Virus record (IMG/VR): IMGVR_UViG_3300035703_000005
Coordinates: 184,836 to 248,835 of that record
Reading direction: 5' to 3' (one strand)
Length of the DNA stretch: 64,000 nt
Part shown: positions 29,581-50,787 of the stretch, in pieces
Numbering within the stretch: the first letter of the stretch is position 1
Layout: each line of letters opens with the position of its first letter
The notes under the pieces: model-generated
What the model was told of the DNA's origin: nothing
Seen by the model: the letters and a program-made list of their open reading frames with translations, nothing else
Database searches by the model: none
Position numbers and translations under genes: made by a program

Positions 29581-29654
29581 CCTCTCAACATGGCTAAGAT
29601 ACCCCATCTGGCTACCCCATGGCATCATCTGTGGCCAGTTATTAAGCTGTCCAC
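29581..29654 (-). promoter_or_regulatory. early promoter cassette (TATCTT -10, AGCCATGTTGAGAG leader, two-box operator)
   Basis: + strand CCTCTCAACATGGCTAAGATAC ... GTGGCCAG-N8-CTGTCCAC. Confidence 0.75.
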
Positions 29655-29771
29655 TATTCACTCAGTTGTCAAGGTTCTATGGTAGGCTCATGATCCTTTG
29701 TGGCTTGAGCTTTACTTAAGCTTTCTTAAGCGGCTTAAGCACTCAGCCCCTTTATGCACTCCCACAGAGTT

Positions 29772-29801
29772 ATTATAAGCCATTCAGAGGGCTTATGTCA
29801 A
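29772..29801 (-). promoter_or_regulatory. consensus sigma70 promoter (leftward)
   Basis: TTGACA (29801-29796), 18 nt, TATAAT (29777-29772). Confidence 0.75.
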
Positions 29802-29837
29802 GCATGAGGATTAGAGCCCTTAGAGTGCTCATAAGGC

Positions 29838-29879
29838 TGTGGAAAACTTATAGACTTTTTCCACAAGTGTTGTGGAAAA
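29838..29879. promoter_or_regulatory. DnaA-box triplet 1
   Basis: TTTTCCACA at 29838-29846 (-), 29857-29865 (+), 29871-29879 (-). Confidence 0.8.
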
Positions 29880-29947
29880 CTTATAAGAACTGTGAGACCT
29901 TATGTGTAGCAAACTGTGTGGGTTCTGAGATTTATGTCCGGGTGCCA

Positions 29948-29976
29948 TTGACATTTTAGCGGTCGTGTGATAGCCT
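29948..29976 (+). promoter_or_regulatory. sigma70 promoter (rightward, antisense to all genes)
   Basis: TTGACA (29948-29953), 17 nt, TAGCCT (29971-29976) with an extended -10 TG. Confidence 0.7.
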
Positions 29977-29983
29977 GCCCGCT

Positions 29984-30111
29984 AAGATCACAAGGTCTCA
30001 GAGGCTTTTCAAGGGTGCTAACACAAGGTCTCAGAGGGCTTTAAGACTCTAGAAGCACCCTAAACTCACATGGCTTTGCGAAAGAAAGCTTTAACAAAGC
30101 CATGTTTTTTT
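29984..30111 (+). ncRNA. putative ~128-nt small RNA
   Basis: Downstream of the + promoter; AGGGTGCT/AGCACCCT stem; 16-nt direct repeat; ends in an 11-bp hairpin ACATGGCTTTG/CAAAGCCATGT plus T7; no convincing ORF. Confidence 0.6.
30068..30111 (+). terminator. intrinsic terminator
   Basis: 11-bp stem 30068-30078/30095-30105 followed by a run of T to 30111. Confidence 0.75.
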
Positions 30112-30131
30112 AGCCATTTATTTTAAGCCCT

Positions 30132-30165
30132 TTTTCCACAGCTTTTTCCACAGCGTTGTGGAAAA
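30132..30165. promoter_or_regulatory. DnaA-box triplet 2
   Basis: TTTTCCACA at 30132-30140 (+), 30144-30152 (+), 30157-30165 (-). Confidence 0.8.
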
Positions 30166-30250
30166 GCTATCATAACTCATTGTTAGCAACTCTCGGAGCA
30201 CTAGTAGTATGTAACTCCACTCCTCTCTAGGTGTTGTTTCCGTTGAGAGC

Positions 30251-30403
30251 TTAGGGGTCATAACTCTCTAACTCTACAGCCCCTTGAGCATAATCATCAT
30301 AGAACAGCTCATCCTCTGTGTGATTAGCATAGTGATCCATGATCTCTTGCTCAAAGTCAAAGAAGCTTTCTTCCCCGATAGGGTGAGCGTTAGCGATGTT
30401 CAT
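30251..30403 (-). CDS. small acidic early protein
   Basis: Hand-translated 50 aa MNIANAHPIGEESFFDFEQEIMDHY...; ATGA overlap with the upstream gene. Confidence 0.55.
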   Translation of the reverse strand: MNIANAHPIGEESFFDFEQEIMDHYANHTEDELFYDDYAQGAVELESYDP

Positions 30404-30585
30404 TTATTCCTCCTGGTGTTGTATTCTCCGAGATTCTCTACATAAACCTCGTTGACACTTTCGTTACCTTTGAGTTCCAGAAGCTCACGCCAATTCCATT
30501 CCTTTGGACTGACACAATTTGTAGCATCAACTGTGAAGTCAAGAGTAACTCTGTAGCGCGTAACTTTGTCGTTGATTGTTTGCAT
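30400..30585 (-). CDS. small early protein
   Basis: 61 aa, RYRVTLDFTVD...PKEWNWRELL. Confidence 0.6.
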   Translation of the reverse strand: MQTINDKVTRYRVTLDFTVDATNCVSPKEWNWRELLELKGNESVNEVYVENLGEYNTRRNK

Positions 30586-30905
30586 TGTGCGATGTCCTTT
30601 GAGTGTAACAAACTACGTAGCTATTTTATACTGTTTGAGGGTTTAAGTCAACAAAATTGTCATACTTTGACAACACTTCATTGATGACTTGATCTGTGAA
30701 ATAATCCACGATTTCATCATACATGAAGCTAATAGTTTCAGGTGAATAATTGTTCACCCAATTCGCTGAGATAAATGTTACTTCGGCTGATGGCATGATT
30801 CTTGAAAGTATTGTGCATAGCTTGGATTGAAACAACTGTCCCGCCATGTGGCGAAGATCAGTAGAGTCGTGGGAACGATTGCGATAGCAAATAGATGGCG
30901 TTTTT

Positions 30906-31106
30906 TCATGAGTTGTTAATCAGATCTTGTTCAATCTGTTGGAGCATGTTTTCTGTCCAAGCTTGAGGATCTGCGACACCATTGTTTGCGTAGAGTTGAC
31001 TATACCGTAGACCATAAAGATCTGGGTTTAGGTGTTGCAACTCTTCAAGAGTTTGAGCAATCCGAACCTGTAGAATGTAGTCGTCAATCATGATGCAAAA
31101 TGTCAA
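30906..31106 (-). CDS. small early protein
   Basis: 66-aa minus-strand ORF tiling the cassette. Confidence 0.55.
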   Translation of the reverse strand: MTFCIMIDDYILQVRIAQTLEELQHLNPDLYGLRYSQLYANNGVADPQAWTENMLQQIEQDLINNS

Positions 31107-31402
31107 TCATTTTTTGATGGTAAGCATCAGCGAGTTGCACAACATTATGAGATTGAGTAGGATCTTCAATCTCGTATTGTGTCATCTCAAGAGCAAAAAT
31201 GACGGTGGAGAGTAACTCTTGCAACTGTTCAAGCTTTTGAGTTTCAGTCATCATTTGGATTCACCTCTTTGAGAACTTGAGTGAACAATTCAATCGCAGC
31301 TTCGTTGCAGTTGTCTTTCTTCATTCGGTAAATGTAGAACTCCAATGCTTCAGTGATAGCTTCTTGTTTGAGTTCTTCCCAGGTTGGCTTTGTCATGATA
31401 AT

Positions 31403-31606
31403 TCAAGCCAAGATTGCGGACTTCATTTCAACATTGCGGATTTCCATCCGAGCATAATCATACCCCTCAACTTCCGTCAGTTGTTGATAGTATGCTTCAG
31501 CCGTAGAACGACAATCAAACAAGCAGAGAGAATCAAAGCTTTCGCCTTCATAATTCCAACCACCGATCACAGCATAAACTTGCACGAGGTTTGCTCCGTT
31601 GTTCAT
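31403..31606 (-). CDS. small early protein (leaderless)
   Basis: MNNGANLVQVYAVIGGWNYEGESFDSL...; ATG 7 nt after the TATCTT -10. Confidence 0.65.
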   Translation of the reverse strand: MNNGANLVQVYAVIGGWNYEGESFDSLCLFDCRSTAEAYYQQLTEVEGYDYARMEIRNVEMKSAILA

Positions 31607-31671
31607 GTGGCTAAGATACCAGGCCCAGAGTCCCCTCGGCGTGATCAGTGGACAGCCAGTGAACTGGCACA
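31607..31671 (-). promoter_or_regulatory. class A early promoter cassette
   Basis: -10 TATCTT 31618-31613; CGCCGA at -35; GTGGACAG-N8-CTGGCACA 31648-31671. Confidence 0.8.
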
Positions 31672-31680
31672 TTGCTACTC

Positions 31681-31701
31681 AAAAGGGGGCGAAGTGCCCC
31701 C
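31681..31701 (-). terminator. intrinsic terminator between cassettes
   Basis: GGGGGC/GCCCCC stem, TTTT on minus strand, directly upstream of the operator. Confidence 0.65.
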
Positions 31702-31713
31702 TAGTGTGCTCAA

Positions 31714-31881
31714 TCAGAACTCAATCGGTTCAAGAGTTGCTACACCGAGAACGCTCTCAATCATCGGGGATTCGGCATAAGTGTGCCCGACAGAATCAGC
31801 GGCCAGAGTGTCAAGCACTTGCAGCATTTGATTGCCGTTTTGAGCAACGCGAAGCATACCGATTGCGGTTTCTTTGGTCAT
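31714..31881 (-). CDS. small early protein
   Basis: MTKETAIGMLRVAQNGNQMLQVLD... Confidence 0.6.
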   Translation of the reverse strand: MTKETAIGMLRVAQNGNQMLQVLDTLAADSVGHTYAESPMIESVLGVATLEPIEF

Positions 31882-31963
31882 GATAAAAGGAAAAAAGTGT
31901 AGGGCAATTTGAGTGTCTTTAGAGCGCATCTCATTCTCATTCGCTATTCGCAAATGGCGAATG

Positions 31964-32173
31964 TTACTGAACTTCCTCTAGCAAATTGTTCAGGTATTCT
32001 TCATCATAAAGCTCTGCAATCTCTGTTTTAATTTCATCCTCACTCATGCCATCTAGATTGTCACAAATGGTGTCAACAGCAAACTGACACAAATCGCGGA
32101 CATCCATGCCATCAACAACATCAGTGGCATAAAGTTCAATCAGTTTGGAAAGCTGTTCTTTGGAAAGTGTCAT
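31964..32173 (-). CDS. small acidic early protein
   Basis: 69 aa, LIELYATDVVDGMDVRDLCQFA. Confidence 0.65.
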   Translation of the reverse strand: MTLSKEQLSKLIELYATDVVDGMDVRDLCQFAVDTICDNLDGMSEDEIKTEIAELYDEEYLNNLLEEVQ

Positions 32174-32176
32174 GAT

Positions 32177-32347
32177 TCAGATGGTAGCTGGGGACAGGGA
32201 AACTTCAACTCGCTTCAGATTCAATCCAGCAAGTTGCTCATTCACACGCTTGCAGATTGCATCAGTCGGGTTCTTTAGCTTGGACTTCTCATACCAAATG
32301 GTACGGCAGCCGTCGTTGGTTTCTACTTGGATTCGGATGGTTTGCAT
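32177..32347 (-). CDS. small early protein
   Basis: Hand-translated 56 aa MQTIRIQVETNDGCRTIWYEKSK... Confidence 0.55.
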   Translation of the reverse strand: MQTIRIQVETNDGCRTIWYEKSKLKNPTDAICKRVNEQLAGLNLKRVEVSLSPATI

Positions 32348-32371
32348 CACTTTGCGTTGCAGTAGTTAGGA

Positions 32372-32539
32372 TCAGTCAAAAACAACAGGCTTGAAGTCAT
32401 CCGCATAACAATTAGCAAAAGCTGATGCGATGGTGACACAATCAAAGACACCAAGTTGCTCACCGTTGCGAACAGCAACCCACATAGGCTTGCGGGTCTC
32501 AAGATCAGCGCAGGGAAGAAAGTTGGTTGCGTTGGTCAT
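32372..32539 (-). CDS. small early protein
   Basis: First gene after a class A promoter; MTNATNFLPCAD... Confidence 0.6.
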   Translation of the reverse strand: MTNATNFLPCADLETRKPMWVAVRNGEQLGVFDCVTIASAFANCYADDFKPVVFD

Positions 32540-32548
32540 TTGCGTTTG

Positions 32549-32619
32549 TCTCAACATGGCTAAGATACCAGAACTGGCTGGTCGTGGCGCGATCAGTGGA
32601 CAGCCGCTCAACTGTCACA
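32549..32619 (-). promoter_or_regulatory. class A early promoter cassette
   Basis: TCTCAACATGGCTAAGATACC ... GTGGACAG-CCGCTCAA-CTGTCACA. Confidence 0.8.
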
Positions 32620-32800
32620 CTCATAATCATAAGGCACAAGCTCTCTCGGTACGATTAACTGATTGTTGATCGAAAACTCATCCAAAAGATAATCAACTGT
32701 CATCTCCATTTGAGCAGCGTACCACTCAAACATCAGGTAAGTTTCCAATGGAATCTCGTAGCCTTCAGTTTCAACAATGGTGGGTTCTTTAGCCATGATT

Positions 32801-32961
32801 TTACCAGTTAATGAGAGTAGCTGTGTTACCAAGTTTGTTCTGCTCATCCACGATTTCCATAGCATGAACATAAGTTTTGACAGTGACATAACGGGCTTTG
32901 CCTTTAGTCTCAGGGAACAAGCCGAGTCGGTCAATGATGCGAACAGTATTAGAATGTTTCA
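32801..32961 (-). CDS. small early protein
   Basis: MKHSNTVRIIDRLGLFPETKGKARYVTVKTY...; start approximate. Confidence 0.55.
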
Positions 32962-33239
32962 TCTTTGTTTTCCTCAAGAGTGAAATCAGACTCGATACAA
33001 TCATACCAAGTCACCAAATCATAGTCTGGTTCCTGCATCCATTCTTCAGCTTCTTCCTTTGTGTTGAATGTCACAGTAGCAACGTTAGTCTCTTTGATGT
33101 GAACAGTGTAAGACATAATCAGTCAGCTGTGGATTGAATGAAGTTAGCAGTGGAGTGCAGAATGCTCCCCGTAGTGTAGCGAACCTGAGGAAAGATCAGG
33201 AACGCTACAATGAAGATCAGGCCGATTGTTTTCATCGTA

Positions 33240-33566
33240 TCAGTTCAGCCGCATCCCAGAGAAGAAAGGAACAGTCACCGAATTGTTGCGATAATCGGAG
33301 AAAGTTACGAACCATTCGCCTTTCTTTTGAAACACATAGTCACCGTTACCATGCTCTTTGAGAATAGCATTCAGACGGGACTTAGTGGTAGCGGTGCGCC
33401 AGCCACCATCAAACAGTTCAATCCAAGTCTCACCGATACGAGCAATCAAGTTACCGTGCAGGTAGACATCAGCAACATTGGTGCAGCTGACAACCTCAGT
33501 GTTGTCCAGCTTGAAGTCCACACCGTTGGTGATGGCTTTGTTCATTTGCTGTTCGATCTTACGCAT
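33240..33566 (-). CDS. conserved phage early protein
   Basis: 108 aa; VYLHGNLIARI..LFDGGWRTATTKSRLNAIL..VFQKKGEWFV, a motif common in phage early regions. Confidence 0.7.
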   Translation of the reverse strand: MRKIEQQMNKAITNGVDFKLDNTEVVSCTNVADVYLHGNLIARIGETWIELFDGGWRTATTKSRLNAILKEHGNGDYVFQKKGEWFVTFSDYRNNSVTVPFFSGMRLN

Positions 33567-33610
33567 GGTTTGTGAAGCGATTGTTTGGTGGGGGGTCTCG
33601 TTTCCCCCCG

Positions 33611-33677
33611 ATGTGGCTAAGATACCAGGCCCAGAGGCCCCTCGGCGGGATTGGTGGACAGCCCGCAGATTGGCACA
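33611..33677 (-). promoter_or_regulatory. class A early promoter cassette
   Basis: Near-identical to the 31607-31671 copy (ATGTGGCTAAGATACCAGGCCCAGAG..CCCTCGGCG..GTGGACAG). Confidence 0.8.
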
Positions 33678-33848
33678 CAGGCCCCGATTCGGCAGGATCC
33701 GACCCATACCCTGGCTGTCGCAAGTCGGAAGCGGTGAGACTCATTGCAGGCACTAGGGCAGAAACCGGAAAAAGCGTTGATTCTGGCCGCCAGGTAGGTT
33801 GGATCATCCCATGCAGCCAGAATCAGCGGGATCTGAGTTTGTGTTAGT

Positions 33849-34043
33849 TTAGAGTCCAGCTGGTTCGATGCAGTAATAGACTCGATCACCATTTGTGCTC
33901 AGTCCATGCACCCATTGGCCGCCATGTTCGATACAACTTTGGTGGTCAACTTGAATGCTGTGAACATAAAGAATGATGACACCAATGACCAACAAAATGA
34001 TCATCAAGAGTTGAAAGCCTGACACCCAATCATCATTAGTCAT
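33849..34043 (-). CDS. small membrane protein, pilin-like C-x3-GG-x-W family
   Basis: 64 aa; SGFQLLMIILL hydrophobic helix then CIEHGGQWVHG..YYC. Confidence 0.6.
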   Translation of the reverse strand: MTNDDWVSGFQLLMIILLVIGVIILYVHSIQVDHQSCIEHGGQWVHGLSTNGDRVYYCIEPAGL

Positions 34044-34046
34044 GAC

Positions 34047-34250
34047 TCAAGCCTCCTCGTATTCGTAATCATAAACCCGCATCACATCATCCTCAAGAAG
34101 CTTAAGCGTCCGTTCGGTAATCATGTGCGGTTTGATGTCACCTTGCTTGTTGAACAGCTGAGTAACCCAATAGGAGGCAATTTGCTCATCCCGTTCAGCA
34201 ATCTGTTCAAAGCAATCAGCAATCAGAAGCTCAAGATCGTTGTTGTTCAT
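34047..34250 (-). CDS. small early protein
   Basis: 67-aa ORF tiling the cassette. Confidence 0.55.
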   Translation of the reverse strand: MNNNDLELLIADCFEQIAERDEQIASYWVTQLFNKQGDIKPHMITERTLKLLEDDVMRVYDYEYEEA

Positions 34251-34293
34251 TGTAGGAAAAACGGAGGTTTTGATGTAGTAAATGTGGAGCTAA

Positions 34294-34461
34294 TCAGTCG
34301 GAGAAACCATAAAGATCCCAACCAGGCTCTTCCTCTTCAGTTTCATTCCAATACTGATCATACTCACATTCGCTCATAGCGAAGACCTTAGCCATTTCCT
34401 CGCGGTCAGCATCGGAGATCTCAAAGATTTCAGCGGGAAGGTCAACGATTTCGTTGAACAT
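34294..34461 (-). CDS. small acidic early protein
   Basis: MFNEIVDLPAEIFEISD...; GAGGA SD in the repeat leader. Confidence 0.6.
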   Translation of the reverse strand: MFNEIVDLPAEIFEISDADREEMAKVFAMSECEYDQYWNETEEEEPGWDLYGFSD

Positions 34462-34470
34462 TGGTTTGAT

Positions 34471-34544
34471 TCCTCTCAACATGGCTAAGATACAGGGCCC
34501 CAGCCCCCTTTGGCGGGTTTGGTGGACAGCCGCCCAACTGGCCT
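34471..34544 (-). promoter_or_regulatory. class A early promoter cassette
   Basis: TCCTCTCAACATGGCTAAGATAC ... TTGGCG ... GTGGACAG-N8-CTGGCCT. Confidence 0.8.
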
Positions 34545-34705
34545 ACCAACCGCGATTTGATTGCTCAAACAGCTTACGATCTAGGGCCTCTTCATACTCA
34601 TCGGGAGAGAGATAATCCTCCCAGCAACCTCTATCATCATAGCTGCGGTTGGAGTATTCCCAAGAGTAGGATTGGCCTTCATAAAAGTGCAGAACCATGA
34701 TCGTT

Positions 34706-34906
34706 TCAGAGAGTTTGGAAAGGTTGAGCTTCTTTGATGTCGCTGTTGTAATACTTACGGAAGATTGAGTTAATCGTATCGTACCATGGCTCATTGCCAC
34801 TCGGATACCCGCAATCTGCAGCCTGTTGAAGAAACTTAAGGATGCAAGTTTCCTCGTCTTGAGTGAACTTAACTCGGTTCAATGTGTAGCCGGTAGTCAT
34901 AATCAA
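34706..34906 (-). CDS. small early protein
   Basis: 66 aa, YTLNRVKFTQDEETCIL. Confidence 0.55.
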   Translation of the reverse strand: MIMTTGYTLNRVKFTQDEETCILKFLQQAADCGYPSGNEPWYDTINSIFRKYYNSDIKEAQPFQTL

Positions 34907-35181
34907 ACCAGTTGAAGTTGGGGTGCAGGTTGAACACTAAAAGTACCAAGCCGATCGCAAGAGATGCTCACTGCGTTTGCAGGTGCTCCCAGTTCATCAA
35001 CAACATCCCAGAAATCTTCTCCTTCTTCAATGACAACATAACCGAACACACCGGCGATGGGCATAGATTGAATGCCCCATCGTTCGGCTGAGCGTTGGGT
35101 ATCCCACCAAGTACGCTCATTCCAGAACATGTTAGGCTCATCATTGCGAGGGCCAAAAGTGATGCAGATAAACTTGCTCAT
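34903..35181 (-). CDS. small early protein
   Basis: MSKFICITFGPRNDEPNMFWNERTWWD...; first gene of the cassette. Confidence 0.6.
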   Translation of the reverse strand: MSKFICITFGPRNDEPNMFWNERTWWDTQRSAERWGIQSMPIAGVFGYVVIEEGEDFWDVVDELGAPANAVSISCDRLGTFSVQPAPQLQLV

Positions 35182-35190
35182 GGGTGTTTG

Positions 35191-35261
35191 TCTCAACATG
35201 GCTAAGATACAGGATCTGGCTGGGTTTGGCGGGATCAGTGGACAGCCCACCAACTGGCACA
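35191..35261 (-). promoter_or_regulatory. class A early promoter cassette
   Basis: TCTCAACATGGCTAAGATAC ... GTGGACAG-CCCACCAA-CTGGCACA. Confidence 0.8.
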
Positions 35262-35264
35262 TTG

Positions 35265-35654
35265 CTACACCATTGTCAGGCCATAATCGTTAAGCATAAT
35301 GTCACGAACATGCTCACGATCAAAGCTGTCACCAGTAAAGTCAGCTCCAGAGCTGATGTATTTCTGTGTAGCTTCCATCACCATGTCTCGGGTAGCTCCG
35401 ATCTTGTAGATACCATCATCCCCATAAAATGCGAGAACATAATCATAAAACTCTTCCATAGGCTTCTGAAGTTGTTTTACAATACGATTCAGATCATCAA
35501 TAGCACCATTCATTGCAGCTCGTGAGTAACCAGTAGCAAATGGGTAGGTCTTTTCATGATCATCTGAGCTTTCATCCACACCATAACAAACATTCACAGC
35601 TTCGGTGAGATTGTTAATCACTCGGAGCAAAGTGTCATCAATGTTGTAAGTCAT
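35265..35654 (-). CDS. early protein
   Basis: 129 aa; YPFATGYSRAAM and DFTGDSFDREHVRD segments; may be a fusion of two small modules. Confidence 0.65.
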   Translation of the reverse strand: MTYNIDDTLLRVINNLTEAVNVCYGVDESSDDHEKTYPFATGYSRAAMNGAIDDLNRIVKQLQKPMEEFYDYVLAFYGDDGIYKIGATRDMVMEATQKYISSGADFTGDSFDREHVRDIMLNDYGLTMV

Positions 35655-35857
35655 CAGATCACACCTTCAGCGATTTGATTCATCACATCCTGAGCATACT
35701 TCATGAACCGATAAGCTGTAACCTCATCATAAGTAACACCATCAAGCACATCTGAGCCCATGTAAGTATCAACAATCAACTTACATGCGTCGTAGAGAGC
35801 AGCGGTGTGTTCGTACTTTGAGTGAAATTGCATAGCGTTGTAAGTAGGCATTGTCAT
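35654..35857 (-). CDS. small early protein
   Basis: 67 aa, overlapping stop/start. Confidence 0.6.
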   Translation of the reverse strand: MTMPTYNAMQFHSKYEHTAALYDACKLIVDTYMGSDVLDGVTYDEVTAYRFMKYAQDVMNQIAEGVI

Positions 35858-36096
35858 CAGAAGTGTGCCTCAGAGTAGTCAAGTTGTGCAGAGTATTCTG
35901 CAATTTTGTTGTAGCACTTCTCACGAGTTTGTTCATCAGCACCCTCCATGAATGAGAAACAATACTTCATCCGTTGCTCAGGATGTGAGAGCACACGAGC
36001 AATCTCAGCTTGACGCTTCTGGTATGCAGCATTGTATGCGAACATCTCGCGGTCTTCAATGCTCATTGTGTGATACTTGCGTTGCATTGGATTCAT
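35857..36096 (-). CDS. small early protein
   Basis: 79 aa, first gene of the cassette. Confidence 0.6.
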   Translation of the reverse strand: MNPMQRKYHTMSIEDREMFAYNAAYQKRQAEIARVLSHPEQRMKYCFSFMEGADEQTREKCYNKIAEYSAQLDYSEAHF

Positions 36097-36169
36097 CTCT
36101 CAACATGGCCAAGATACCACCGCCAAGGCCCTCTCGGCGGATTTGGTGTGCAGCCCACCGATTGTCACA
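36097..36169 (-). promoter_or_regulatory. class A early promoter cassette
   Basis: CTCTCAACATGGCCAAGATACC ... TCGGCG ... GTGTGCAG-N8-TTGTCACA. Confidence 0.8.
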
Positions 36170-36333
36170 CCAGTTCCTTTAATTGCTCTTTGGAACAGAA
36201 CTTATAGGTATAACCTGGATAGAACTTGTTGACGAGATGGGGAACACCATAACGACCCAATTGGCCGTTTCCGTTATAGTTGACCCACACAACTTTGGTG
36301 GACTCTTCTACAAAATGTTCGTAGGGAAATGCT

Positions 36334-36891
36334 TTAGTCATCGGAAGAATAGTGAAATGCTCTGTTTTGTTTGTGTTTTGTTTGAGTTTGTTTAGAACTT
36401 GGCTTCTTACCGGATCTTACCTTACCTGCGGTAGTTTGTCCAATAGATTGATCTGGATTGTTACCGGCTTTGGCTTTACCGATCTTGAAAGAATCTCCTT
36501 TTTCTGATGTAGGATGAAGTTCAGCTTCTTGACCTTTTCTTTGAGTGATGACACTATGTTGTGCTTCACCAGAAGGGCCTTTTTTCTTACCAATGTTTCT
36601 CACCATTCTCTCAAAGCCTTTCCTAGATTGTTTCTTCGGATTCCTTGAGAGTTGGTATGCAACTTCGGTCTCGGGCTTTCCTTCACCTTTCTCGTCATAA
36701 GATCCAACGACTTTGCTGAATCCAACACCTTTTCTTCTGAGTTTCTTTTCAAGCGATTTTCTCTCACTACGATTCTCTTTTTCTGACTGAGATCCACGAT
36801 CACGAGATACCATTGCGGTGTCTCTTTCTCTCGTGTTTCTAATCATTTTATTGAGAGTAGCTTCATGCAAAAATTGCTTGAAAGTTTTCAT
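36334..36891 (-). CDS. putative internal head protein (capsid-targeting N-terminus), basic
   Basis: 185 aa; MKTFKQFLHE-A resembles the T4 internal-protein targeting sequence MKTYQEFIAE; CTAAATA late-type promoter at 36918-36912. Confidence 0.6.
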   Translation of the reverse strand: MKTFKQFLHEATLNKMIRNTRERDTAMVSRDRGSQSEKENRSERKSLEKKLRRKGVGFSKVVGSYDEKGEGKPETEVAYQLSRNPKKQSRKGFERMVRNIGKKKGPSGEAQHSVITQRKGQEAELHPTSEKGDSFKIGKAKAGNNPDQSIGQTTAGKVRSGKKPSSKQTQTKHKQNRAFHYSSDD

Positions 36892-37067
36892 GTCTAATCT
36901 AATTTTTTAAGTATTTAGATTAGTGTCGGTTTAGGTTGGAAAGCTGTCGTTCAATCTCTATCTTCATGGGCATCAGATGTGATACCATGAAGTGTTCATA
37001 CTCATTCTCTTTCATCAGGTTGCTGATGTTTTCAATCTGCAACAATGCGAGAATGAACTTAGTTTTC

Positions 37068-37274
37068 TCATCCATAGCTTCGGTCAAATCGGTGTTTGCA
37101 ATCAGGACACATAAAGTAAGCAGTTCGGTCTAGATCACGATCATAACATGCAATCACCCGACTGTAAAAGTATGGGGGAGAATAATTCTCCCACCGATCT
37201 TCTGGGATCAATGAATCAACCCAGTTTGCATCACATTCTGGGCAATTTTCTAGTTTGGTTACATCAGGTTTCAT
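37068..37274 (-). CDS. small Zn-ribbon protein
   Basis: 68 aa with CPEC ... CPDC. Confidence 0.6.
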   Translation of the reverse strand: MKPDVTKLENCPECDANWVDSLIPEDRWENYSPPYFYSRVIACYDRDLDRTAYFMCPDCKHRFDRSYG

Positions 37275-37669
37275 CGTTGATACAGATAACTACCGAAAGG
37301 ATCACACTTACTATAACACAATTCCCGAGAATTATCATCCAGAAGATTGTACCTCACACCCTTAGCTGGAGACTTCCAGGATGCAGACTTGTAGACATCG
37401 CCAGTGGATTTATCAATGAAACAATGCACCGAGCGACTGATACCATCCTTCTGAATCAGTTTGTAATACTTACGGCCTTCCTCCAGATAATACTCATGAT
37501 TCACACCTTTTTCTTTAATCTCTTCAATTTTGTTGATGTGATAATCTACATTCTCACCCCTAGCTGCTGCAGATTCATGCAGTCGCAGAAACCAAGCTTT
37601 CATGGACAGGTAGAGTGCGTCACACAACATGACACTATAATGTTGAACTTTAGAGTCGTTCATTTTCAC
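37271..37669 (-). CDS. conserved T4-like phage early protein
   Basis: 132 aa; GRKYYKLIQ..SRSVHCFIDKSTGDVYKSASWKSPAKGVRYNL. Confidence 0.7.
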   Translation of the reverse strand: MKMNDSKVQHYSVMLCDALYLSMKAWFLRLHESAAARGENVDYHINKIEEIKEKGVNHEYYLEEGRKYYKLIQKDGISRSVHCFIDKSTGDVYKSASWKSPAKGVRYNLLDDNSRELCYSKCDPFGSYLYQR

Positions 37670-37944
37670 AGAAGATGATAAATTAGTGGTTCAAGTGCAT
37701 CAACAGGTTGACCTGTTCTCTTCAACATGTAGTAACCTTGTAACATTTTAAGGTCACTACCTTTCTTGGGTATTTTACCCTTTGGTGGTGGAAGTGGATC
37801 ACCAAACTTTCTGGGTTTCCCAGGCTTTCTCTTCCACCACTTTTTTTCTTCCTCTAATTCACGAGGAAGTGTAACTGACCAACTCCGAACTTTATGCGTG
37901 AAGTTCATAATTTCAGTTGATGATTGTGTCAGTTTCAGGATCAA
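37666..37944 (-). CDS. small basic early protein
   Basis: WWKRKPGKPRKFG..GYYMLK; start uncertain. Confidence 0.5.
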   Translation of the reverse strand: MILKLTQSSTEIMNFTHKVRSWSVTLPRELEEEKKWWKRKPGKPRKFGDPLPPPKGKIPKKGSDLKMLQGYYMLKRTGQPVDALEPLIYHLL

Positions 37945-38125
37945 ATGTTACCTCAGTGATAACATCAAACTCATCAGTCATTTTCACATAATTCCATTCA
38001 CCTTCATCCTCACCTTCTTGGTAACAATGAATGAAACCTTCTGCGTCTTGTTTGACAAAACAACCATCATAGTTGTCTTCATCAAACACATAACCAGATG
38101 CAATCAATGCGTCAACGAAAGTCAT
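37913..38125 (-). CDS. small acidic early protein
   Basis: 70 aa, first gene after the promoter at 38141. Confidence 0.65.
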   Translation of the reverse strand: MTFVDALIASGYVFDEDNYDGCFVKQDAEGFIHCYQEGEDEGEWNYVKMTDEFDVITEVTFDPETDTIIN

Positions 38126-38140
38126 GGGAGTTGTGTGTTT

Positions 38141-38213
38141 CTCTCAACATAGCTAAGATACATCGTATCAGCGCCCAGTGGGGGGATTAGTGTGCGGTTC
38201 GCGGATTGGCACA
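38141..38213 (-). promoter_or_regulatory. class A early promoter cassette
   Basis: CTCTCAACATAGCTAAGATAC ... GTGTGCGG-N8-TTGGCACA. Confidence 0.75.
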
Positions 38214-38850
38214 AGGGGGCTGGGTTTGGGGGCGATCATACCAACCCCCAGTGAGTCCCGATCCCGTCTCAGTGAGATCCCTGTTGTGGCAATGGGTTTG
38301 AGTTTGAGCAAACTTTGATTTTTCTGCAATTTTACCCCAGTAGGGGATTGGTTCATCCATTGCAATCAGATTCATCAAAAATGAATTGTTGTAACTAATT
38401 GACTCAATCTTTCTTCTGCATCTCTTCAATGTCCTTCAACATTTCATCCAGACGCTTAGCACTTCGGGCATTCATAATGATGTCTGCAACACAATAGCCA
38501 AACGAGAAAAAGGCAGCAAATGCAAGAATAGCTGAAAACATAATTAACCTCCTACGGATTGAATAGTAATAACATCTAAAGTTTCCTGAGTTAGATTAAC
38601 TTCCTCAGGTTCATTTGTCTCCTCTAGATAAGCACTGAGAAGATCATAAATCAAACTCATTTGCTCATTGGTGAACAGGTATTGTTGTTCAGGGTGAAGA
38701 ATAGAAACATTCATATCAGTGCATTTTGTCCGATGACATGTTGAACCTTTCTCACTGCCATACGAAAGTTTGTAAAGTCCATTGTTTCGTCTTCTTCACA
38801 GAAATCTTCAAAGATCTTTTTAATTTGTTCTTCTGTAATTTGTGGGTCAA

Positions 38851-39081
38851 TCATTTCAGAACATGCACAAAGTCAAGGGAAAATACACACCAACCAGTGA
38901 GATCTGTCACATGTTCAACTAGACATTGTGCGATGGATTCGTCATCATCGTCGTCATCAACTTCCACTTCATAAGTGTTGCCAACGACAGAATCAATGAC
39001 GGATTGTTGTTCTTCTAGAGTGAAATCTTCATCATCAAAATCAAATGAAGCTTCAGTGACGTGGAGTAAAAGAGTTTTCAT
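38851..39081 (-). CDS. small acidic early protein
   Basis: 76 aa, VTEASFDFDD..LVEHVTDLTGWCV. Confidence 0.65.
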   Translation of the reverse strand: MKTLLLHVTEASFDFDDEDFTLEEQQSVIDSVVGNTYEVEVDDDDDDESIAQCLVEHVTDLTGWCVFSLDFVHVLK

Positions 39082-39244
39082 CAGACTTCATCCCTCATTT
39101 CAGAAAGTTTTTCATAAAGATCACGACATTGACCAACATCAAGACCAGTGATGTTACACATTTCACCCCAGTTTTCATTGAACTGATGTTCAACGATTGC
39201 CAGAATGGCATCCAATTCTTCAAATGTGAGAGTAGTTTGTGTCA

Positions 39245-39409
39245 TCAGTAGTTAGAAACAGTGGTGAAGATGATACCAGTTTCGTTGTAGCGAAGGTCAA
39301 CATCACACTGGTATTCCTCGCTCAAATTGTATGCGAGGTCATAAGCTTTGTCCATGTCAGTGGTAGTGTTCTCCCAAGGAGCTCCGTAACACTTAACATC
39401 AATTCGCAT
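39245..39409 (-). CDS. small early protein
   Basis: MRIDVKCYGAPWENTTTDMDKAYDLAYNLSEEY. Confidence 0.65.
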   Translation of the reverse strand: MRIDVKCYGAPWENTTTDMDKAYDLAYNLSEEYQCDVDLRYNETGIIFTTVSNY

Positions 39410-39420
39410 GGGGTGGATTC

Positions 39421-39493
39421 CTCTCAACATGGCCAAGATACCCGATCTGAGCCCCCAGTGGCGGGTCTGGTGTCCAGCCCGCCAACTGGCACA
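39421..39493 (-). promoter_or_regulatory. class A early promoter cassette
   Basis: CTCTCAACATGGCCAAGATACC ... GTGGCG ... GTGTCCAG-N8-CTGGCACA. Confidence 0.8.
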
Positions 39494-39498
39494 CTAGA

Positions 39499-39714
39499 TC
39501 ATTTGCTGCTCCGAGAACCACCGAATAACATGCCAATGAGCAACACAATCACAACATTCTGCCAGAATGCCAGACTAACTCCAAACCAACCCAGAACAAC
39601 ACCAAGCAACCAAGCTTGGAATGAAATAATACCACCAACTAGAAGAATGATAAGAGCAACAAGAGCAAGCAACTGCACTGCAGTCAGATCAAACTTTGTG
39701 TACCTTTTAGCCAT
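39499..39714 (-). CDS. small membrane protein (paralog of 50077-50265)
   Basis: AWLLGVVLGWFGVSLAFWQN, hydrophobic. Confidence 0.65.
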   Translation of the reverse strand: MAKRYTKFDLTAVQLLALVALIILLVGGIISFQAWLLGVVLGWFGVSLAFWQNVVIVLLIGMLFGGSRSSK

Positions 39715-39763
39715 GATAAAATGCCTCGTGAGAAAAAAGAATAGTAAGAGTATAGGTTATTAT

Positions 39764-39997
39764 TTAGCCTCCGAACAATTCATCAAACAGATTATCCATT
39801 TCCATCATTTCGTTCTGACGATCAATCTGATTACGCATCTCAACATAATACTGTTGTTCCATCTTGAGCTTCAGCAACTGATCACCAATCTCGTGCAGTT
39901 TGTTGTTAATTTCAATCCGATCCATTCCGTTCACCGTAGTAACGGTGATTGGCATACCTTGTGACATCGTGGTGCGTTCGGAGATTGTGTGAGTCAT
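39764..39997 (-). CDS. small coiled-coil early protein
   Basis: MTHTISERTTMSQGMP..DRIEINNKLHEIGDQLLKLK. Confidence 0.6.
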   Translation of the reverse strand: MTHTISERTTMSQGMPITVTTVNGMDRIEINNKLHEIGDQLLKLKMEQQYYVEMRNQIDRQNEMMEMDNLFDELFGG

Positions 39998-40004
39998 GGG
40001 GAAA

Positions 40005-40077
40005 CCTCTCAACATGGCTAGAATACATTGCCTGGCGTCCTCTGGCGAGTCACTAGGCCGGTTCCGGAACTGTCACA
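40005..40077 (-). promoter_or_regulatory. class A early promoter cassette
   Basis: CCTCTCAACATGGCTAGAATAC ... CTGGCG ... CCGGTTCCGGAACTGTCACA. Confidence 0.75.
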
Positions 40078-48857: not shown

Positions 48858-49262
48858 TCATTTGTTCATTTGAAGAGTAGGAACGGGCATACCACCTTCG
48901 GTAGGCACATAGATGGTCACATTACCTTTGTTAGCACCTTCTTCCAGACCAGTAATATACAGATACTGCAGATACTCACGATTGTCTTTCAGCGAGTTAC
49001 CGATGATCTGGTTTGCTTTCGCAACACCTTGAGCACGAATCACTTCAGCATCTGCAAGTTGTTGTGCAGAATCTTTCTTTGCTTGTGCTTCAAGAACTGC
49101 AACTTGACGGGTATATTCTGCTTTTTGTAGTTCTGCTTTACCTGCAAGGGATTGTGCCCATACATTATAGAGCGGACCAATAACAGCATTGATAATCACC
49201 AAAGAAACAAGGAAAGAGACGCCAATGATACTAGCGTTGCGAAGAGTGTTGTCTTGATTCAT
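48858..49262 (-). CDS. membrane protein with band-7/SPFH-like coiled-coil tail
   Basis: 134 aa; N-terminal TM helix; AELQKAEYTRQVAVLEAQA..AEVIRAQGVAKANQIIGNSL. Confidence 0.65.
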   Translation of the reverse strand: MNQDNTLRNASIIGVSFLVSLVIINAVIGPLYNVWAQSLAGKAELQKAEYTRQVAVLEAQAKKDSAQQLADAEVIRAQGVAKANQIIGNSLKDNREYLQYLYITGLEEGANKGNVTIYVPTEGGMPVPTLQMNK

Positions 49263-49885: not shown

Positions 49886-50080
49886 TCAGTTATAGGTACA
49901 GAGTTGAGTGATACGACCGTATTGAATGCCTTCAGACCATTTGCCACCAGCATCAAGACACGCTTGTTTGTTGGGAATAAATGATCGGTCTCCGTTAATA
50001 AAAAGATTGATAAACATTCCTCCAATAACAACAAGAATCAGAACAATCATCAGTTCAACAAGAGTGAATCCGTTTTTCAT
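49886..50080 (-). CDS. type IV pilin-like mini-protein
   Basis: 64 aa; MKNG|FTLVELMIVL class III prepilin cleavage/N-methylation motif; C-terminal C..GGKW..C. Confidence 0.75.
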   Translation of the reverse strand: MKNGFTLVELMIVLILVVIGGMFINLFINGDRSFIPNKQACLDAGGKWSEGIQYGRITQLCTYN

Positions 50081-50265
50081 TTGGAAGAAACGTTAGTTTT
50101 GAAGATAGCGTTAGCGAGAAAGATAATGGCAAAGTTCTGCCAGAAGGACAAGGATACACCAAACCAAGACAGAATCAGTCCAAGCAACCACGCCTCAAAG
50201 AAGAGACCAGCAACAGCAAGGACAATTACACCAAAAGCAACGCCAAGAGCAGTAGAAGTTTTCAT
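50077..50265 (-). CDS. small membrane protein (paralog of 39499-39714)
   Basis: EAWLLGLILSWFGVSLSFWQN. Confidence 0.65.
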   Translation of the reverse strand: MKTSTALGVAFGVIVLAVAGLFFEAWLLGLILSWFGVSLSFWQNFAIIFLANAIFKTNVSSK

Positions 50266-50403
50266 TTAGTTTCTCCAACATAAACATAATCGGGATGTTT
50301 GGCTTTAAAAGCCTCTACCTGCTCTTCAGTTTTAAGAAATACCGAAAGAGTAGTGTTCGGATGTTCCTTAAAGTAATACTTCACTTGAATGAGGTTTTTC
50401 ATA

Positions 50404-50787
50404 TCACGCAGGGATCACTAGTTCATTACCTTTAGGAGTATAACACTTCCACTCACCATCGGCAAAGATGTAAGCGTAGTCACCCCAAGAATCATTTACG
50501 GATTTGATAAAAGTATTGAAAGATTCGTGGAGTTTGGGATCTACGTTTTCTTCACCACGCTCAGCATAATAGAGAGGGCGGGGTTCCATTTCTTTCTGTT
50601 CCCAATCTTTATTAGTCCACAGAGAGCTGATGTCACCACCATCAATCAACTCTGCAGCTTGTTCGTAAGAGTCGAAGTGTTCTTTGAGTTTCCTACCATT
50701 CCACTCGGGATAATTATCCCAATGTGAATACACAGAGAGAACAGATCCATCCTTGAGTTGGATGCCGATTCGTCCGCGAGTTGCCAT
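50404..50787 (-). CDS. conserved phage early protein
   Basis: 127 aa; MATRGRIG..SVYSHWDNYPEWNG..LIDGGDISSL. Confidence 0.7.
   Translation of the reverse strand: MATRGRIGIQLKDGSVLSVYSHWDNYPEWNGRKLKEHFDSYEQAAELIDGGDISSLWTNKDWEQKEMEPRPLYYAERGEENVDPKLHESFNTFIKSVNDSWGDYAYIFADGEWKCYTPKGNELVIPA

What the first reader, a model, noticed from the sequence alone, without database searches (positions are those of the whole stretch)
49886..50080. Phage-encoded type IV pilin mimic, with a degenerate paralog at 33849-34043
Seen: the 64-aa protein starts MKNG|FTLVELMIVL (class III signal peptide with E5) followed by only ~35 aa containing C-x3-GG-x-W-x2-G-x8-C. The 33849-34043 product has the same C-x3-GG-x-W-x2-G-x8-C tail and SGFQLLMIILL lacking E5. 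Established: cyanobacteria have PilD-processed type IV pili that serve for motility, DNA uptake and as phage receptors. Inference: a truncated pilin poisons pilus assembly or titrates PilD, giving superinfection exclusion or changing host surface and buoyancy.
Basis: partly seen in the sequence, partly recalled or inferred. Interest (0 to 1): 0.6.

Follow-up and report, generated by a model that had tools for sequence, protein, structure and literature searches.

The report
Freshwater cyanophage mini-pilin with conserved loop
A large freshwater cyanophage carries a 64-residue protein with a genuine type IV pilin start and a tiny, almost invariant disulfide loop; it belongs to an undescribed phage-only family that probably tampers with the host's pili.

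Summary
ORF 49886-50080 (-) encodes 64 aa with a class III signal peptide (MKNG|FTLVE) that passes the curated cut-offs of Pfam N_methyl and TIGR02532. The window is the end of a complete 249-kb psbA/psbD-bearing cyanomyovirus from fresh water.

The gene is one of more than 140 distinct sequences, all 60-79 aa and all from metagenomes. Gly-1, Phe/Tyr+1, Thr+2 and Glu+5 are kept while the rest of the helix drifts. The last 24 residues are nearly invariant despite free synonymous change.

A profile search of 1.84 billion proteins shows a wider set of small proteins with the same C-x3-GG-x-W loop. Every context sampled looks like a phage. Nothing matched in cultured phages, in 185,579 prokaryote species, or beyond the N-terminus in 201 genomes of the likely host family.

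The likely hosts (freshwater Cyanobium) encode PilD, a secretin, PilB/PilT-type ATPases and pilins.

The gene at 33849-34043 is a real but distant relative. It is a well-conserved family that lacks Glu+5, not a decaying copy.

Best reading: a PilD-processed mini-pilin that enters the host type IV pilus pathway during infection. Processing, incorporation and the effect on pili are untested. The invariant loop argues for a specific periplasmic target, which a simple "truncated pilin poison" does not explain.

The parts
49886..50080 (-). Mini-pilin gene, 64 aa. It has a 4-residue leader (MKNG), a predicted PilD site G4|F5, a hydrophobic alpha1N-like helix (residues 5-29), a linker and a Cys41-Cys61 loop.
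   Evidence: ORF. PF07963 and TIGR02532 pass their cut-offs. 114 homologous clusters. AF2 model with mean pLDDT 79.6: helix 7-28, helix 38-43, hairpin 46-53/56-63.
50069..50080 (-). Leader peptide codons (M-K-N-G). The scissile bond is predicted after Gly4.
   Evidence: Gly at -1 in 130 of 135 family members. Leaders are 3-9 residues (4-6 in 129 of 135), net charge +1 in 118. Cleavage itself is inferred, not shown.
49898..49960 (-). Cys41-Cys61 loop (C-x3-GG-K-W-S-E-G-I-Q-Y-G-R-x-T-Q-L-C), the most conserved part of the protein.
   Evidence: Invariant columns. Across 26 distinct nucleotide versions most invariant residues use 2-4 synonymous codons (Trp8, Ser9 and Gln19 do not vary). Amino-acid changes are almost all at loop positions 2, 3 and 17. 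Pairwise codon differences: 1851 synonymous, 725 non-synonymous.
50077..50265 (-). Upstream 62-aa protein with two predicted transmembrane segments. Its stop overlaps the mini-pilin start (ATGA). It is a frequent but not obligatory neighbour.
   Evidence: phrog_4743, E 1.1e-6. The same overlapping arrangement occurs in 16 related loci. Phage S-SRM01 has this gene without the pilin. A contig variant in run X2 lacks it.
33849..34043 (-). Distant paralogue, 64 aa. It has a transmembrane anchor with a conserved G-F but Met at +5 and an acidic leader, and the same C-x3-GG-x-W-x2-G loop closed by a second Cys.
   Evidence: No N_methyl hit.
48858..49262 (-). 134-aa membrane protein two genes downstream of the mini-pilin. 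It is related to the C-terminal part of phage SPFH/Band_7-type proteins and is a recurrent neighbour of mini-pilin genes.
   Evidence: phrog_11227 'protease', E 8e-50, and phrog_200 positions 264-360, E 4.8e-11. It lies immediately downstream of the pilin gene in 9 related loci and within about 1.5 kb in 11 more. Band_7 proteins that hit phrog_200 sit beside other mini-pilins (L001, L171).
50437..50465 (-). Candidate sigma-70-like promoter (TTGCCG-17-TATACT with an extended TG) upstream of the block of small genes that includes the pair.
   Evidence: Consensus scan only. The region gave 20 sites against 12.7 expected, so this is weak evidence.

Best explanation
The gene encodes a phage 'mini-pilin'. 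The host prepilin peptidase PilD is expected to cut the 4-residue leader after Gly4 and methylate Phe1. That leaves a mature protein of about 60 residues: a canonical pilin alpha1N helix carrying a roughly 25-residue head, made of a short helix and a beta-hairpin and probably stapled by a Cys41-Cys61 disulfide.

The gene sits in a block of small, tightly packed genes typical of T4-like early regions. The mature protein would collect in the inner membrane with the host pilins and be picked up by the type IV pilus assembly platform through the Glu5-dependent contacts that normal pilins use. Its invariant loop would then engage a conserved periplasmic or pilus component.

The result would be pili that are capped, blocked or changed on their surface. 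An infected cell would stop reeling in further cyanophages, and progeny would not be lost on pili of doomed cells. That is superinfection exclusion at the pilus.

Shown here: the pilin signature, its selective maintenance, phage-only distribution, and PilD plus pilus genes in the probable hosts.

Inferred: early expression, cleavage, incorporation, the target of the loop, and the benefit to the phage.
For: - The class III signal peptide passes curated thresholds.
- Gly-1, F/Y+1, T+2 and E+5 are kept across more than 130 sequences while neighbouring helix positions vary. Many members match canonical type IVa pilins through about residue 19, including Gly14.
- The best PDB sequence matches are truncated Geobacter pilins and PilA/PilE N-termini.
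- Protein-level purifying selection is shown by synonymous variation.
- The phage has no peptidase of its own, so processing must rely on the host.
- The phage psbA is 94% identical to that of freshwater Cyanobium MAGs. Those genomes carry PilD, a secretin, PilB/PilT-type ATPases and 5-7 N_methyl proteins each. PilD was found in 66 of 81 genomes of that family.
- Both other complete carrier genomes also encode psbA.
- Literature: T4-like cyanophages attach to Synechococcus type IV pili and piliated cells are hit more often (bioRxiv 10.1101/2025.09.20.677514). Prophage FimU-like pilins are built into pili and block adsorption, and 60-residue PilA-like genes occur in lytic Pseudomonas phages (PMC12952977).
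Against: - No experiment or structure shows cleavage, assembly or any effect on pili.
- The strongest constraint lies on the C-terminal loop, not on the helix that would poison assembly.
- Relatives with the same loop but no pilin signature exist (the paralogue family; P0222, P0226, P0234). The loop can therefore work from a plain membrane anchor.
- Four family members have Arg and one has Gln at -1, which should prevent cleavage.
- The closest cultured phage, S-SRM01, lacks the gene, so it is dispensable.
- The phage leader (4-6 aa) differs from host pilin leaders (up to about 35 aa).
- In the cited preprint, pili were not needed for infection in monoculture.
- Host assignment rests on psbA similarity only.
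Confidence: 0.42

Rival explanations
1. It is a periplasmic effector on a membrane anchor. The functional unit is the disulfide-stapled loop, and the N-terminal helix only tethers it to the inner membrane, whether or not PilD trims it. The loop would bind a conserved envelope target that need not belong to the pilus, such as peptidoglycan, a secretin, or the tail lysozyme or needle of a superinfecting phage. That would resemble T4 Sp, a small N-terminally anchored periplasmic protein that blocks superinfection.
For: - The loop is the invariant part.
- The same loop occurs on plain transmembrane anchors, and four times in tandem in a protein with a lipoprotein-type signal (P0173).
- The paralogue in this genome lacks Glu+5 yet is well conserved.
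- The neighbours are small membrane proteins, a lipoprotein in some loci, and SPFH-type proteins.
Against: - It does not explain why Gly-1, F/Y+1 and above all Glu+5 are held invariant in this branch. A buried acidic residue is costly in a plain anchor.
- No homology to T4 Sp or Imm was detected.
- No target has been identified.
Confidence: 0.3
2. It is part of the lysis or lysis-timing apparatus: a holin, antiholin or spanin-like small membrane protein working with the neighbouring small transmembrane proteins and the SPFH-like protein.
For: - It sits among small membrane-protein genes.
- In some loci a predicted lipoprotein gene lies directly upstream.
- As far as I know, lysis genes of T4-like cyanophages are poorly defined.
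Against: - There is no endolysin next to it in the window.
- The neighbours vary between loci.
- The pilin signature has no role in known holins or spanins.
- S-SRM01 keeps the neighbours but lacks the gene.
Confidence: 0.1
3. It is a pilus-displayed or pilus-machinery-secreted factor that changes host behaviour rather than blocking phages. It could alter aggregation, sinking or grazing exposure of infected cells, or block DNA uptake.
For: Pili of marine picocyanobacteria control suspension and grazing escape (PMC7994388, abstract). The protein carries the export and assembly signal of pilins.
Against: A lytic infection is short, and a benefit from changed buoyancy is speculative. Nothing in the sequence points to it.
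Confidence: 0.08
4. It is a chance ORF or a decaying fragment of a captured host pilin, with no function.
For: It is very short, lacks a normal pilin head, and is missing from S-SRM01. Natural deletion and fusion variants exist (P0114, P0292).
Against: More than 140 distinct intact sequences exist, with strong protein-level constraint and free synonymous change. The loop is absent from host genomes.
Confidence: 0.02

Closest known systems
Prophage FimU-like minor pilins (P-FimU) and phage PilA-like proteins, including 60-residue truncated PilA in lytic Pseudomonas phages (Sztanko et al., Cell Rep 2026, PMC12952977)
   Same: They are phage-encoded proteins with a type IV pilin N-terminus. P-FimU is built into the host pilus and blocks adsorption of pilus-binding phages. 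The authors note short N-terminal-only PilA genes in virulent phages and propose incorporation or assembly block.
   Different: P-FimU and P-PilA are full-size homologues of host pilins. The cyanophage protein has no host counterpart for its head, carries an invariant Cys loop, and occurs in cyanomyoviruses. Only the first 20-30 residues are similar (TIGR01708 GspH, E 4e-4, residues 3-24). The truncated Pseudomonas-phage PilA genes have not been characterised.
Geobacter PilA-N ('geopilin domain 1'), a naturally truncated type IVa pilin of about 61 residues (PDB 2M7G, 7TGG, 9EGP)
   Same: It gives the best sequence matches among solved structures (E 3e-5 to 5e-3). It is about the same size and has the same canonical N-terminus.
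   Different: It is a cellular protein. Its head is supplied by a separate PilA-C protein (my knowledge, not tested here). It has no Cys loop, and the match covers only residues 2-26.
Cytoplasmic phage inhibitors of type IV pili (Tip, Aqs1, Zip, PlzR; reviewed in PMC11436027, PMC11461919)
   Same: They are small phage proteins that shut down host pili and give superinfection exclusion.
   Different: They act on PilB or PilZ in the cytoplasm and are not pilin-like. There is no sequence relation.
T4 superinfection exclusion proteins Imm and Sp
   Same: They are small early membrane proteins of a T4-type phage that protect an infected cell from further infection. Sp is N-terminally anchored and acts in the periplasm (my knowledge).
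   Different: No detectable homology. They have no pilin signature. This is a functional analogy only.
PHROG small pilin-like families (phrog_11263, 10597, 13280, 12086; phrog_3433 'pilin')
   Same: They are short phage proteins whose N-termini resemble prepilins. They give weak hits to residues 2-30.
   Different: None of them covers the Cys loop, and all but phrog_3433 have unknown function. The family found here is not represented in PHROGs v4 or in the 50,697 phage records searched.

Membership tests
Type IV (pre)pilin / class III signal peptide proteins (Pfam PF07963, TIGR02532) | HMM match above the curated cut-off | tested here: met
   PF07963: 23.5 bits against 21.2. TIGR02532: 27.1 bits against 16.3. 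Most homologues carry a precomputed PF07963 hit.
Type IV (pre)pilin / class III signal peptide proteins (Pfam PF07963, TIGR02532) | Short basic leader ending in Gly(-1), then Phe/Tyr/Met(+1) | tested here: met
   The window protein has MKNG|F. Across the family, G at -1 in 130 of 135; F in 94 and Y in 39 at +1; leaders 3-9 aa (4-6 in 129 of 135), net charge +1 in 118.
Type IV (pre)pilin / class III signal peptide proteins (Pfam PF07963, TIGR02532) | Glu at +5 followed by a hydrophobic alpha1N helix of about 20 residues | tested here: met
   E9 (+5) is invariant in 41 aligned sequences. The model has a helix at 7-28 with pLDDT 96 in residues 11-20.
Type IV (pre)pilin / class III signal peptide proteins (Pfam PF07963, TIGR02532) | Globular alpha-beta head (multi-stranded sheet) with a C-terminal disulfide-bounded region | tested here: not met
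   Only about 35 residues follow the helix. The model shows one short helix and a two-stranded hairpin with two Cys. Fold searches found no pilin head. It is therefore a 'mini' pilin, not a standard one.
Type IV (pre)pilin / class III signal peptide proteins (Pfam PF07963, TIGR02532) | Cleavage and N-methylation by PilD, and assembly into a filament | not testable with these tools
   The complex prediction with a candidate host PilD gave no verdict. Biochemistry is needed.
Type IV (pre)pilin / class III signal peptide proteins (Pfam PF07963, TIGR02532) | Encoded with, or dependent on, a type IV pilus or type II secretion machine | tested here: inconclusive
   The phage has no Peptidase_A24. 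The genomes nearest by psbA have PilD, a secretin, PilB/PilT-type ATPases and pilins. The host link rests on psbA similarity only.
Phage FimU-like / PilA-like pilus-replacement proteins (PMC12952977) | Full-length homology to a host pilin (FimU/GspH or PilA) | tested here: not met
   Matches to GspH, ComGC, ComGD and PilA models cover only residues 2-29 and fall far below their cut-offs. Profile hits in 201 host-family genomes never extend past position 46.
   hhalign probability 88.9%, E 2.4e-6. In the joint alignment C, GG, W, G, G and C are invariant and the Gly before F is nearly so. The second gene fails the pilin signature (Met at +5, acidic leader, no HMM hit).
T4 Imm / Sp superinfection exclusion proteins | Sequence homology to Imm or Sp families | tested here: not met
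   No Pfam, NCBIfam or PHROG hit of that kind for the mini-pilin or the upstream 62-aa protein at E up to 10 or 1.

The most novel reading that the evidence does not exclude
The gene is the best-conserved member of a phage-restricted superfamily of 'mini-pilins'. In this family a class III signal peptide hands a roughly 25-residue disulfide-stapled helix-hairpin (C-x3-GG-x-W...C) to the host's type IV pilus or type II secretion machine. The family is spread over unrelated aquatic phages and often sits beside phage SPFH/Band_7 membrane proteins. It would then be a general, so far unrecognised phage device for capping or re-surfacing host type IV filaments. The non-pilin relatives, including the paralogue here, would be a membrane-tethered version of the same effector.
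Probability: 0.3. Interest if true: 0.75.

Novelty: new variant of a known kind. Interest (0 to 1): 0.6.

Why it matters
Type IV pili of picocyanobacteria have recently been shown to keep cells suspended, to deter grazers and to raise the rate at which cyanophages meet their hosts. A phage gene that enters this pathway would be the first known cyanophage counter-move at the pilus. It would affect superinfection, competition between phages and possibly the sinking of infected cells.

The family also offers a minimal, highly constrained pilin of about 60 residues for studying what PilD and the assembly platform need. Its small conserved loop has an unknown target that could point to a conserved weak spot of the pilus machine.

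All members come from metagenomes, and the nearest cultured phage lacks the gene. The family has therefore gone unnoticed.

Tried and rejected
- **tblastn against 50,697 phage records.** No relative was found for the mini-pilin or for two distant relatives, P0178 and P0164. The paralogue gave only two chance-level hits, E 0.3, to a haloarchaeal virus. The low-complexity filter may mask the helix, but the invariant 24-residue tail should have scored. I read this as real absence from cultured phages (inference).
- **Pattern scan of 185,579 prokaryote genomes.** No relative was found. The scan is limited to near-exact loop peptides.
- **Fold searches.** Foldseek against PDB gave nothing at E <= 0.001. 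VIA-align wide gave Z <= 3.0, with long-helix matches only. The model is too small for fold searches to say anything.
- **Complex prediction with a candidate host PilD.** No verdict, score 0.00. This is neither for nor against binding.
- **Nucleotide-level conservation of the tail** (for example an overlapping RNA). Rejected, because most invariant residues use several synonymous codons.
- **The upstream 62-aa protein as an obligate partner.** Rejected. S-SRM01 has it without the pilin. Many loci have the pilin without it. A natural contig variant replaces it.
- **A captured host pilin fragment.** Rejected. Hits in the host family cover the N-terminus only, and leader lengths differ.
- **Co-occurrence of the two paralogous families.** Not found. 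Two complete carrier genomes lack the second family, and the weak hits in two fragments appear to be the first family cross-matching.
- **BLASTP of the 134-aa neighbour against Band_7 proteins.** Nothing was found. The link appeared only through phrog_200.
- **tRNA and Rfam searches around the paralogue.** Nothing was found. RNAalifold gave no convincing structure for the repeats there.
- **Evidence of transcription.** None. No listed run is on record as RNA. One run guessed to be RNA holds a 324-nt contig over 49899-50199, which proves nothing.

Full report
**What is there**

The minus strand of the window carries a 64-codon ORF at 49886-50080 whose product begins MKNG|FTLVELMIVL. It passes the curated thresholds of both general prepilin models: Pfam N_methyl at 23.5 bits against 21.2, and TIGR02532 at 27.1 bits against 16.3, E 2.5e-6. 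It is the only such match in the genome.

After a hydrophobic stretch of about 25 residues come 35 residues containing C41-x3-GG-K-W-S-E-G-x9-C61. The true spacings are x9 here and x10 in the second gene. The second ORF, at 33849-34043, is also 64 aa. It has G-F-Q-L-L-M (Met at +5), an acidic leader, and C37-x3-GG-Q-W-V-H-G-x10-C58. It gets no prepilin hit.

**The genome**

The window is bases 184836-248835 of a 248,835-bp IMG/VR virus record rated 100% complete. The record encodes psbA and psbD. Its DNA touches Synechococcus phage S-PM2 only briefly: 81% identity over 332 bp.

The closest cultured relative found for this locus is Synechococcus phage S-SRM01, a member of the Kyanoviridae from a freshwater reservoir. 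Public runs that hold the locus are labelled freshwater, lake water, aquatic or subsurface metagenomes and come from nine studies. The phage psbA is 94% identical to that of freshwater Cyanobium MAGs. This is a large freshwater T4-like cyanophage.

**The family**

A word-indexed search of 5.8 billion proteins found 114 clusters, nearly all 60-79 aa. With cluster members this makes 142 distinct sequences. An IMG/VR scan found 42 loci. The ESM Atlas cluster has 80 members, all viral.

In 41 aligned members T+2, E+5, C41, G45, G46, W48-R56, T58, Q59 and C61 are invariant. Gly-1 is kept in more than 90%. The interior of the helix varies freely. Of 135 sequences that keep the N-terminus, 130 have Gly at -1 (four have Arg, one has Gln), 94 have Phe and 39 have Tyr at +1. 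Leaders are 3-9 residues, 4-6 in 129 of the 135, usually with net charge +1.

In the 21-codon Cys loop most invariant residues are written with two to four synonymous codons across 26 distinct nucleotide versions. Amino-acid changes are almost confined to loop positions 2, 3 and 17. The constraint therefore acts on the protein, not on the DNA.

The AlphaFold2 model has a mean pLDDT of 79.6. It gives a helix at 7-28, a short helix at 38-43 and a hairpin at 46-53/56-63, with one Cys in the short helix and the other in the second strand. Fold searches were uninformative for so small a model. By sequence, the best solved relatives are the truncated Geobacter pilin PilA-N and the N-termini of PilA and PilE.

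**Distribution**

No relative was found in 50,697 phage records or in one genome each of 185,579 prokaryote species (pattern-limited). In 201 genomes of the likely host family the family profile matched only pilin N-termini, never past position 46.

S-SRM01 keeps the upstream gene and the downstream block but has an unrelated 28-codon ORF where the pilin gene would be. Both other complete carrier genomes (224 and 258 kb) also encode psbA.

**A wider family**

A profile built from both families was run against 1.84 billion representatives and gave 620 hits at E <= 1e-3. Of the best 150, 32 carry C-x3-GG-x-[W/Y/F]:
- 22 of these have a clear prepilin N-terminus (60-160 aa).
- The rest have a plain transmembrane anchor, for example P0222, P0226, P0234 and the paralogue family.
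- One (P0173) has four tandem loop modules behind a lipoprotein-type signal.

Eight contexts I sampled look like phage DNA: dense co-directional small ORFs with domains such as Phage_T4_Y07C, RlaP, NinG, Dam, MT-A70, UvrD-helicase with HNH, and Kyano_Gp96. A ninth, P0173, lies on an 812-bp contig that tells nothing. No sampled member lay in a bacterial pilus operon. Nine is a small sample.

**The 'paralog'**

Kinship is supported by three results:
- BLASTP gives E 4e-5 over the loop.
- Profile-profile comparison gives probability 88.9%, E 2.4e-6.
- The A1 profile hits the second gene in its own genome at E 1.2e-4.

The joint alignment puts the G-F and the C, GG, W, G, G and C in register. The second gene is not degenerate. 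It belongs to its own family of 13 clusters with 25 invariant columns. That family is widespread in T4-like phage contigs and absent from two complete genomes that carry the first family. It is a diverged relative that lacks the pilin signature.

**Surroundings**

The stop codon of an upstream 62-aa protein with two predicted transmembrane segments (phrog_4743) overlaps the pilin start (ATGA). The same arrangement occurs in 16 related loci. Other loci have a different small membrane protein, a predicted lipoprotein or an unrelated gene there. One natural contig variant lacks the 62-aa gene. It is therefore a frequent neighbour, not an obligate partner.

The 134-aa membrane protein at 48858-49262 hits phrog_11227 ('protease') and the C-terminal third of phrog_200. 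That is the same PHROG matched by the full-length Band_7 proteins that sit one gene away from the mini-pilin in L001 and directly beside the distant relative P0190 in L171. A Band_7 gene also lies 4 kb from P0178. The link between mini-pilins and SPFH-type proteins recurs in several lineages. However, S-PM2 and S-SRM01 have the 134-aa gene without a pilin.

**Hosts**

The three genomes nearest by psbA each encode a Peptidase_A24 (PilD), a secretin, PilB/PilT-type ATPases and five to seven N_methyl proteins. PilD was found in 66 of 81 genomes sampled from that family. The phage has no peptidase of its own. The host pilins found have leaders of up to about 35 residues but the same mature start, FTL(I/V)ELM.

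**Mechanism**

The following comes from established pilin biology, not from tests here. Gly-1 is required for PilD cleavage. Glu+5 is required for assembly rather than for cleavage or membrane insertion.

A buried Glu held invariant in a helix that otherwise drifts is hard to explain for a mere anchor. I therefore favour a PilD-processed mini-pilin that is taken up by the host pilus machine (confidence 0.42). T4-like cyanophages bind Synechococcus pili, and piliated cells are hit more often (bioRxiv 10.1101/2025.09.20.677514). Phage pilins built into pili block adsorption, and the same paper notes 60-residue PilA-like genes in virulent phages (PMC12952977). The likeliest pay-off is therefore exclusion of further phages, or protection of progeny from pili of infected cells.

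The invariant loop, and its occurrence on non-pilin anchors, shows that the head is not dispensable filler. It must recognise something conserved. This keeps alive the rival that the loop is a periplasmic effector and the pilin signal only one way of placing it (0.3). Lysis-related (0.1) and behaviour-modifying (0.08) roles are less likely. A functionless remnant is excluded by the conservation.

Early expression is only suggested by the gene packing and by a weak promoter-like site. No RNA evidence was found. A complex prediction with a candidate host PilD gave no verdict.

**Novelty**

Phage-encoded pilins and small phage inhibitors of pili are known. A literature search for cyanophage together with prepilin or pilin found no report of a cyanophage pilin gene. 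I found no description of this family, its invariant loop, its wider phage-only relatives or the link to SPFH proteins. PHROGs v4 has no model covering the loop. I rate it a new variant of a known kind, with interest 0.6.

Noticed in passing
window 29583-40026, minus strand; copies at about 29583, 32532-32619, 33602-33689, 34470-34557, 35174-35261, 36094-36181, 38142, 39422, 40007: A GC-rich repeat of about 90 nt occurs at least nine times, always on the coding strand. Each copy ends about 15-25 nt before the likely true ATG of a small gene. A 20-nt core recurs 8 times against 0 expected by chance. Two copies flank the paralogue gene. The repeat explains the GC bump at 32-36 kb and makes mechanical ORF calls run too far upstream. 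It has no Rfam match and no convincing conserved fold. It may be a phage promoter or 5' leader, or a mobile intergenic repeat.
   Followed up: partly
window 48858-49262 (-); L001 5390-6202; L171 4142-4999; L055 1970-2806: Mini-pilin genes in several unrelated phage lineages lie next to or near SPFH/Band_7-type membrane proteins (phrog_200). The window's 134-aa 'protease' homologue matches only the C-terminal third of that PHROG. This suggests a functional link between phage SPFH proteins and these small envelope proteins.
   Followed up: partly
window 1870-9375 (-) and 11012-23800 (-): Two giant ORFs of 2501 and 4262 aa lie in a low-GC stretch (0.29-0.33) beside the small-gene region (GC 0.40-0.46). 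I did not analyse them. Presumably they are large structural or fibre proteins.
   Followed up: no
L030 2510-2995, L032, L038, L039 (upstream of the mini-pilin in those loci): In one clade a 161-166-aa predicted lipoprotein (signal peptide ending in a Cys lipobox; phrog_24725, unknown function) sits directly upstream of the mini-pilin in place of the 62-aa membrane protein.
   Followed up: no
P0114, P0292, P0159, P0160 (metagenomic relatives); run X2 contig joining window 50074 to 50270: Natural deletion and fusion variants join the start of the upstream membrane protein, or the end of the lipoprotein, to the C-terminal loop of the mini-pilin. Another variant replaces the upstream gene. The locus is a hot spot of rearrangement.
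   Followed up: partly
L053 2501-2692 (Synechococcus phage S-SRM01, record 72351-72542): The homologue of the 62-aa membrane protein (81% identical) is intact in S-SRM01 but not annotated in the RefSeq record.
   Followed up: yes
window 50077-50265 (-): The 62-aa membrane protein gives sub-threshold hits to PetG (cytochrome b6f subunit 5): Pfam E 0.011 and NCBIfam E 0.034, over residues 7-27. This is probably only a similar transmembrane helix, but it is curious in a cyanophage.
   Followed up: no
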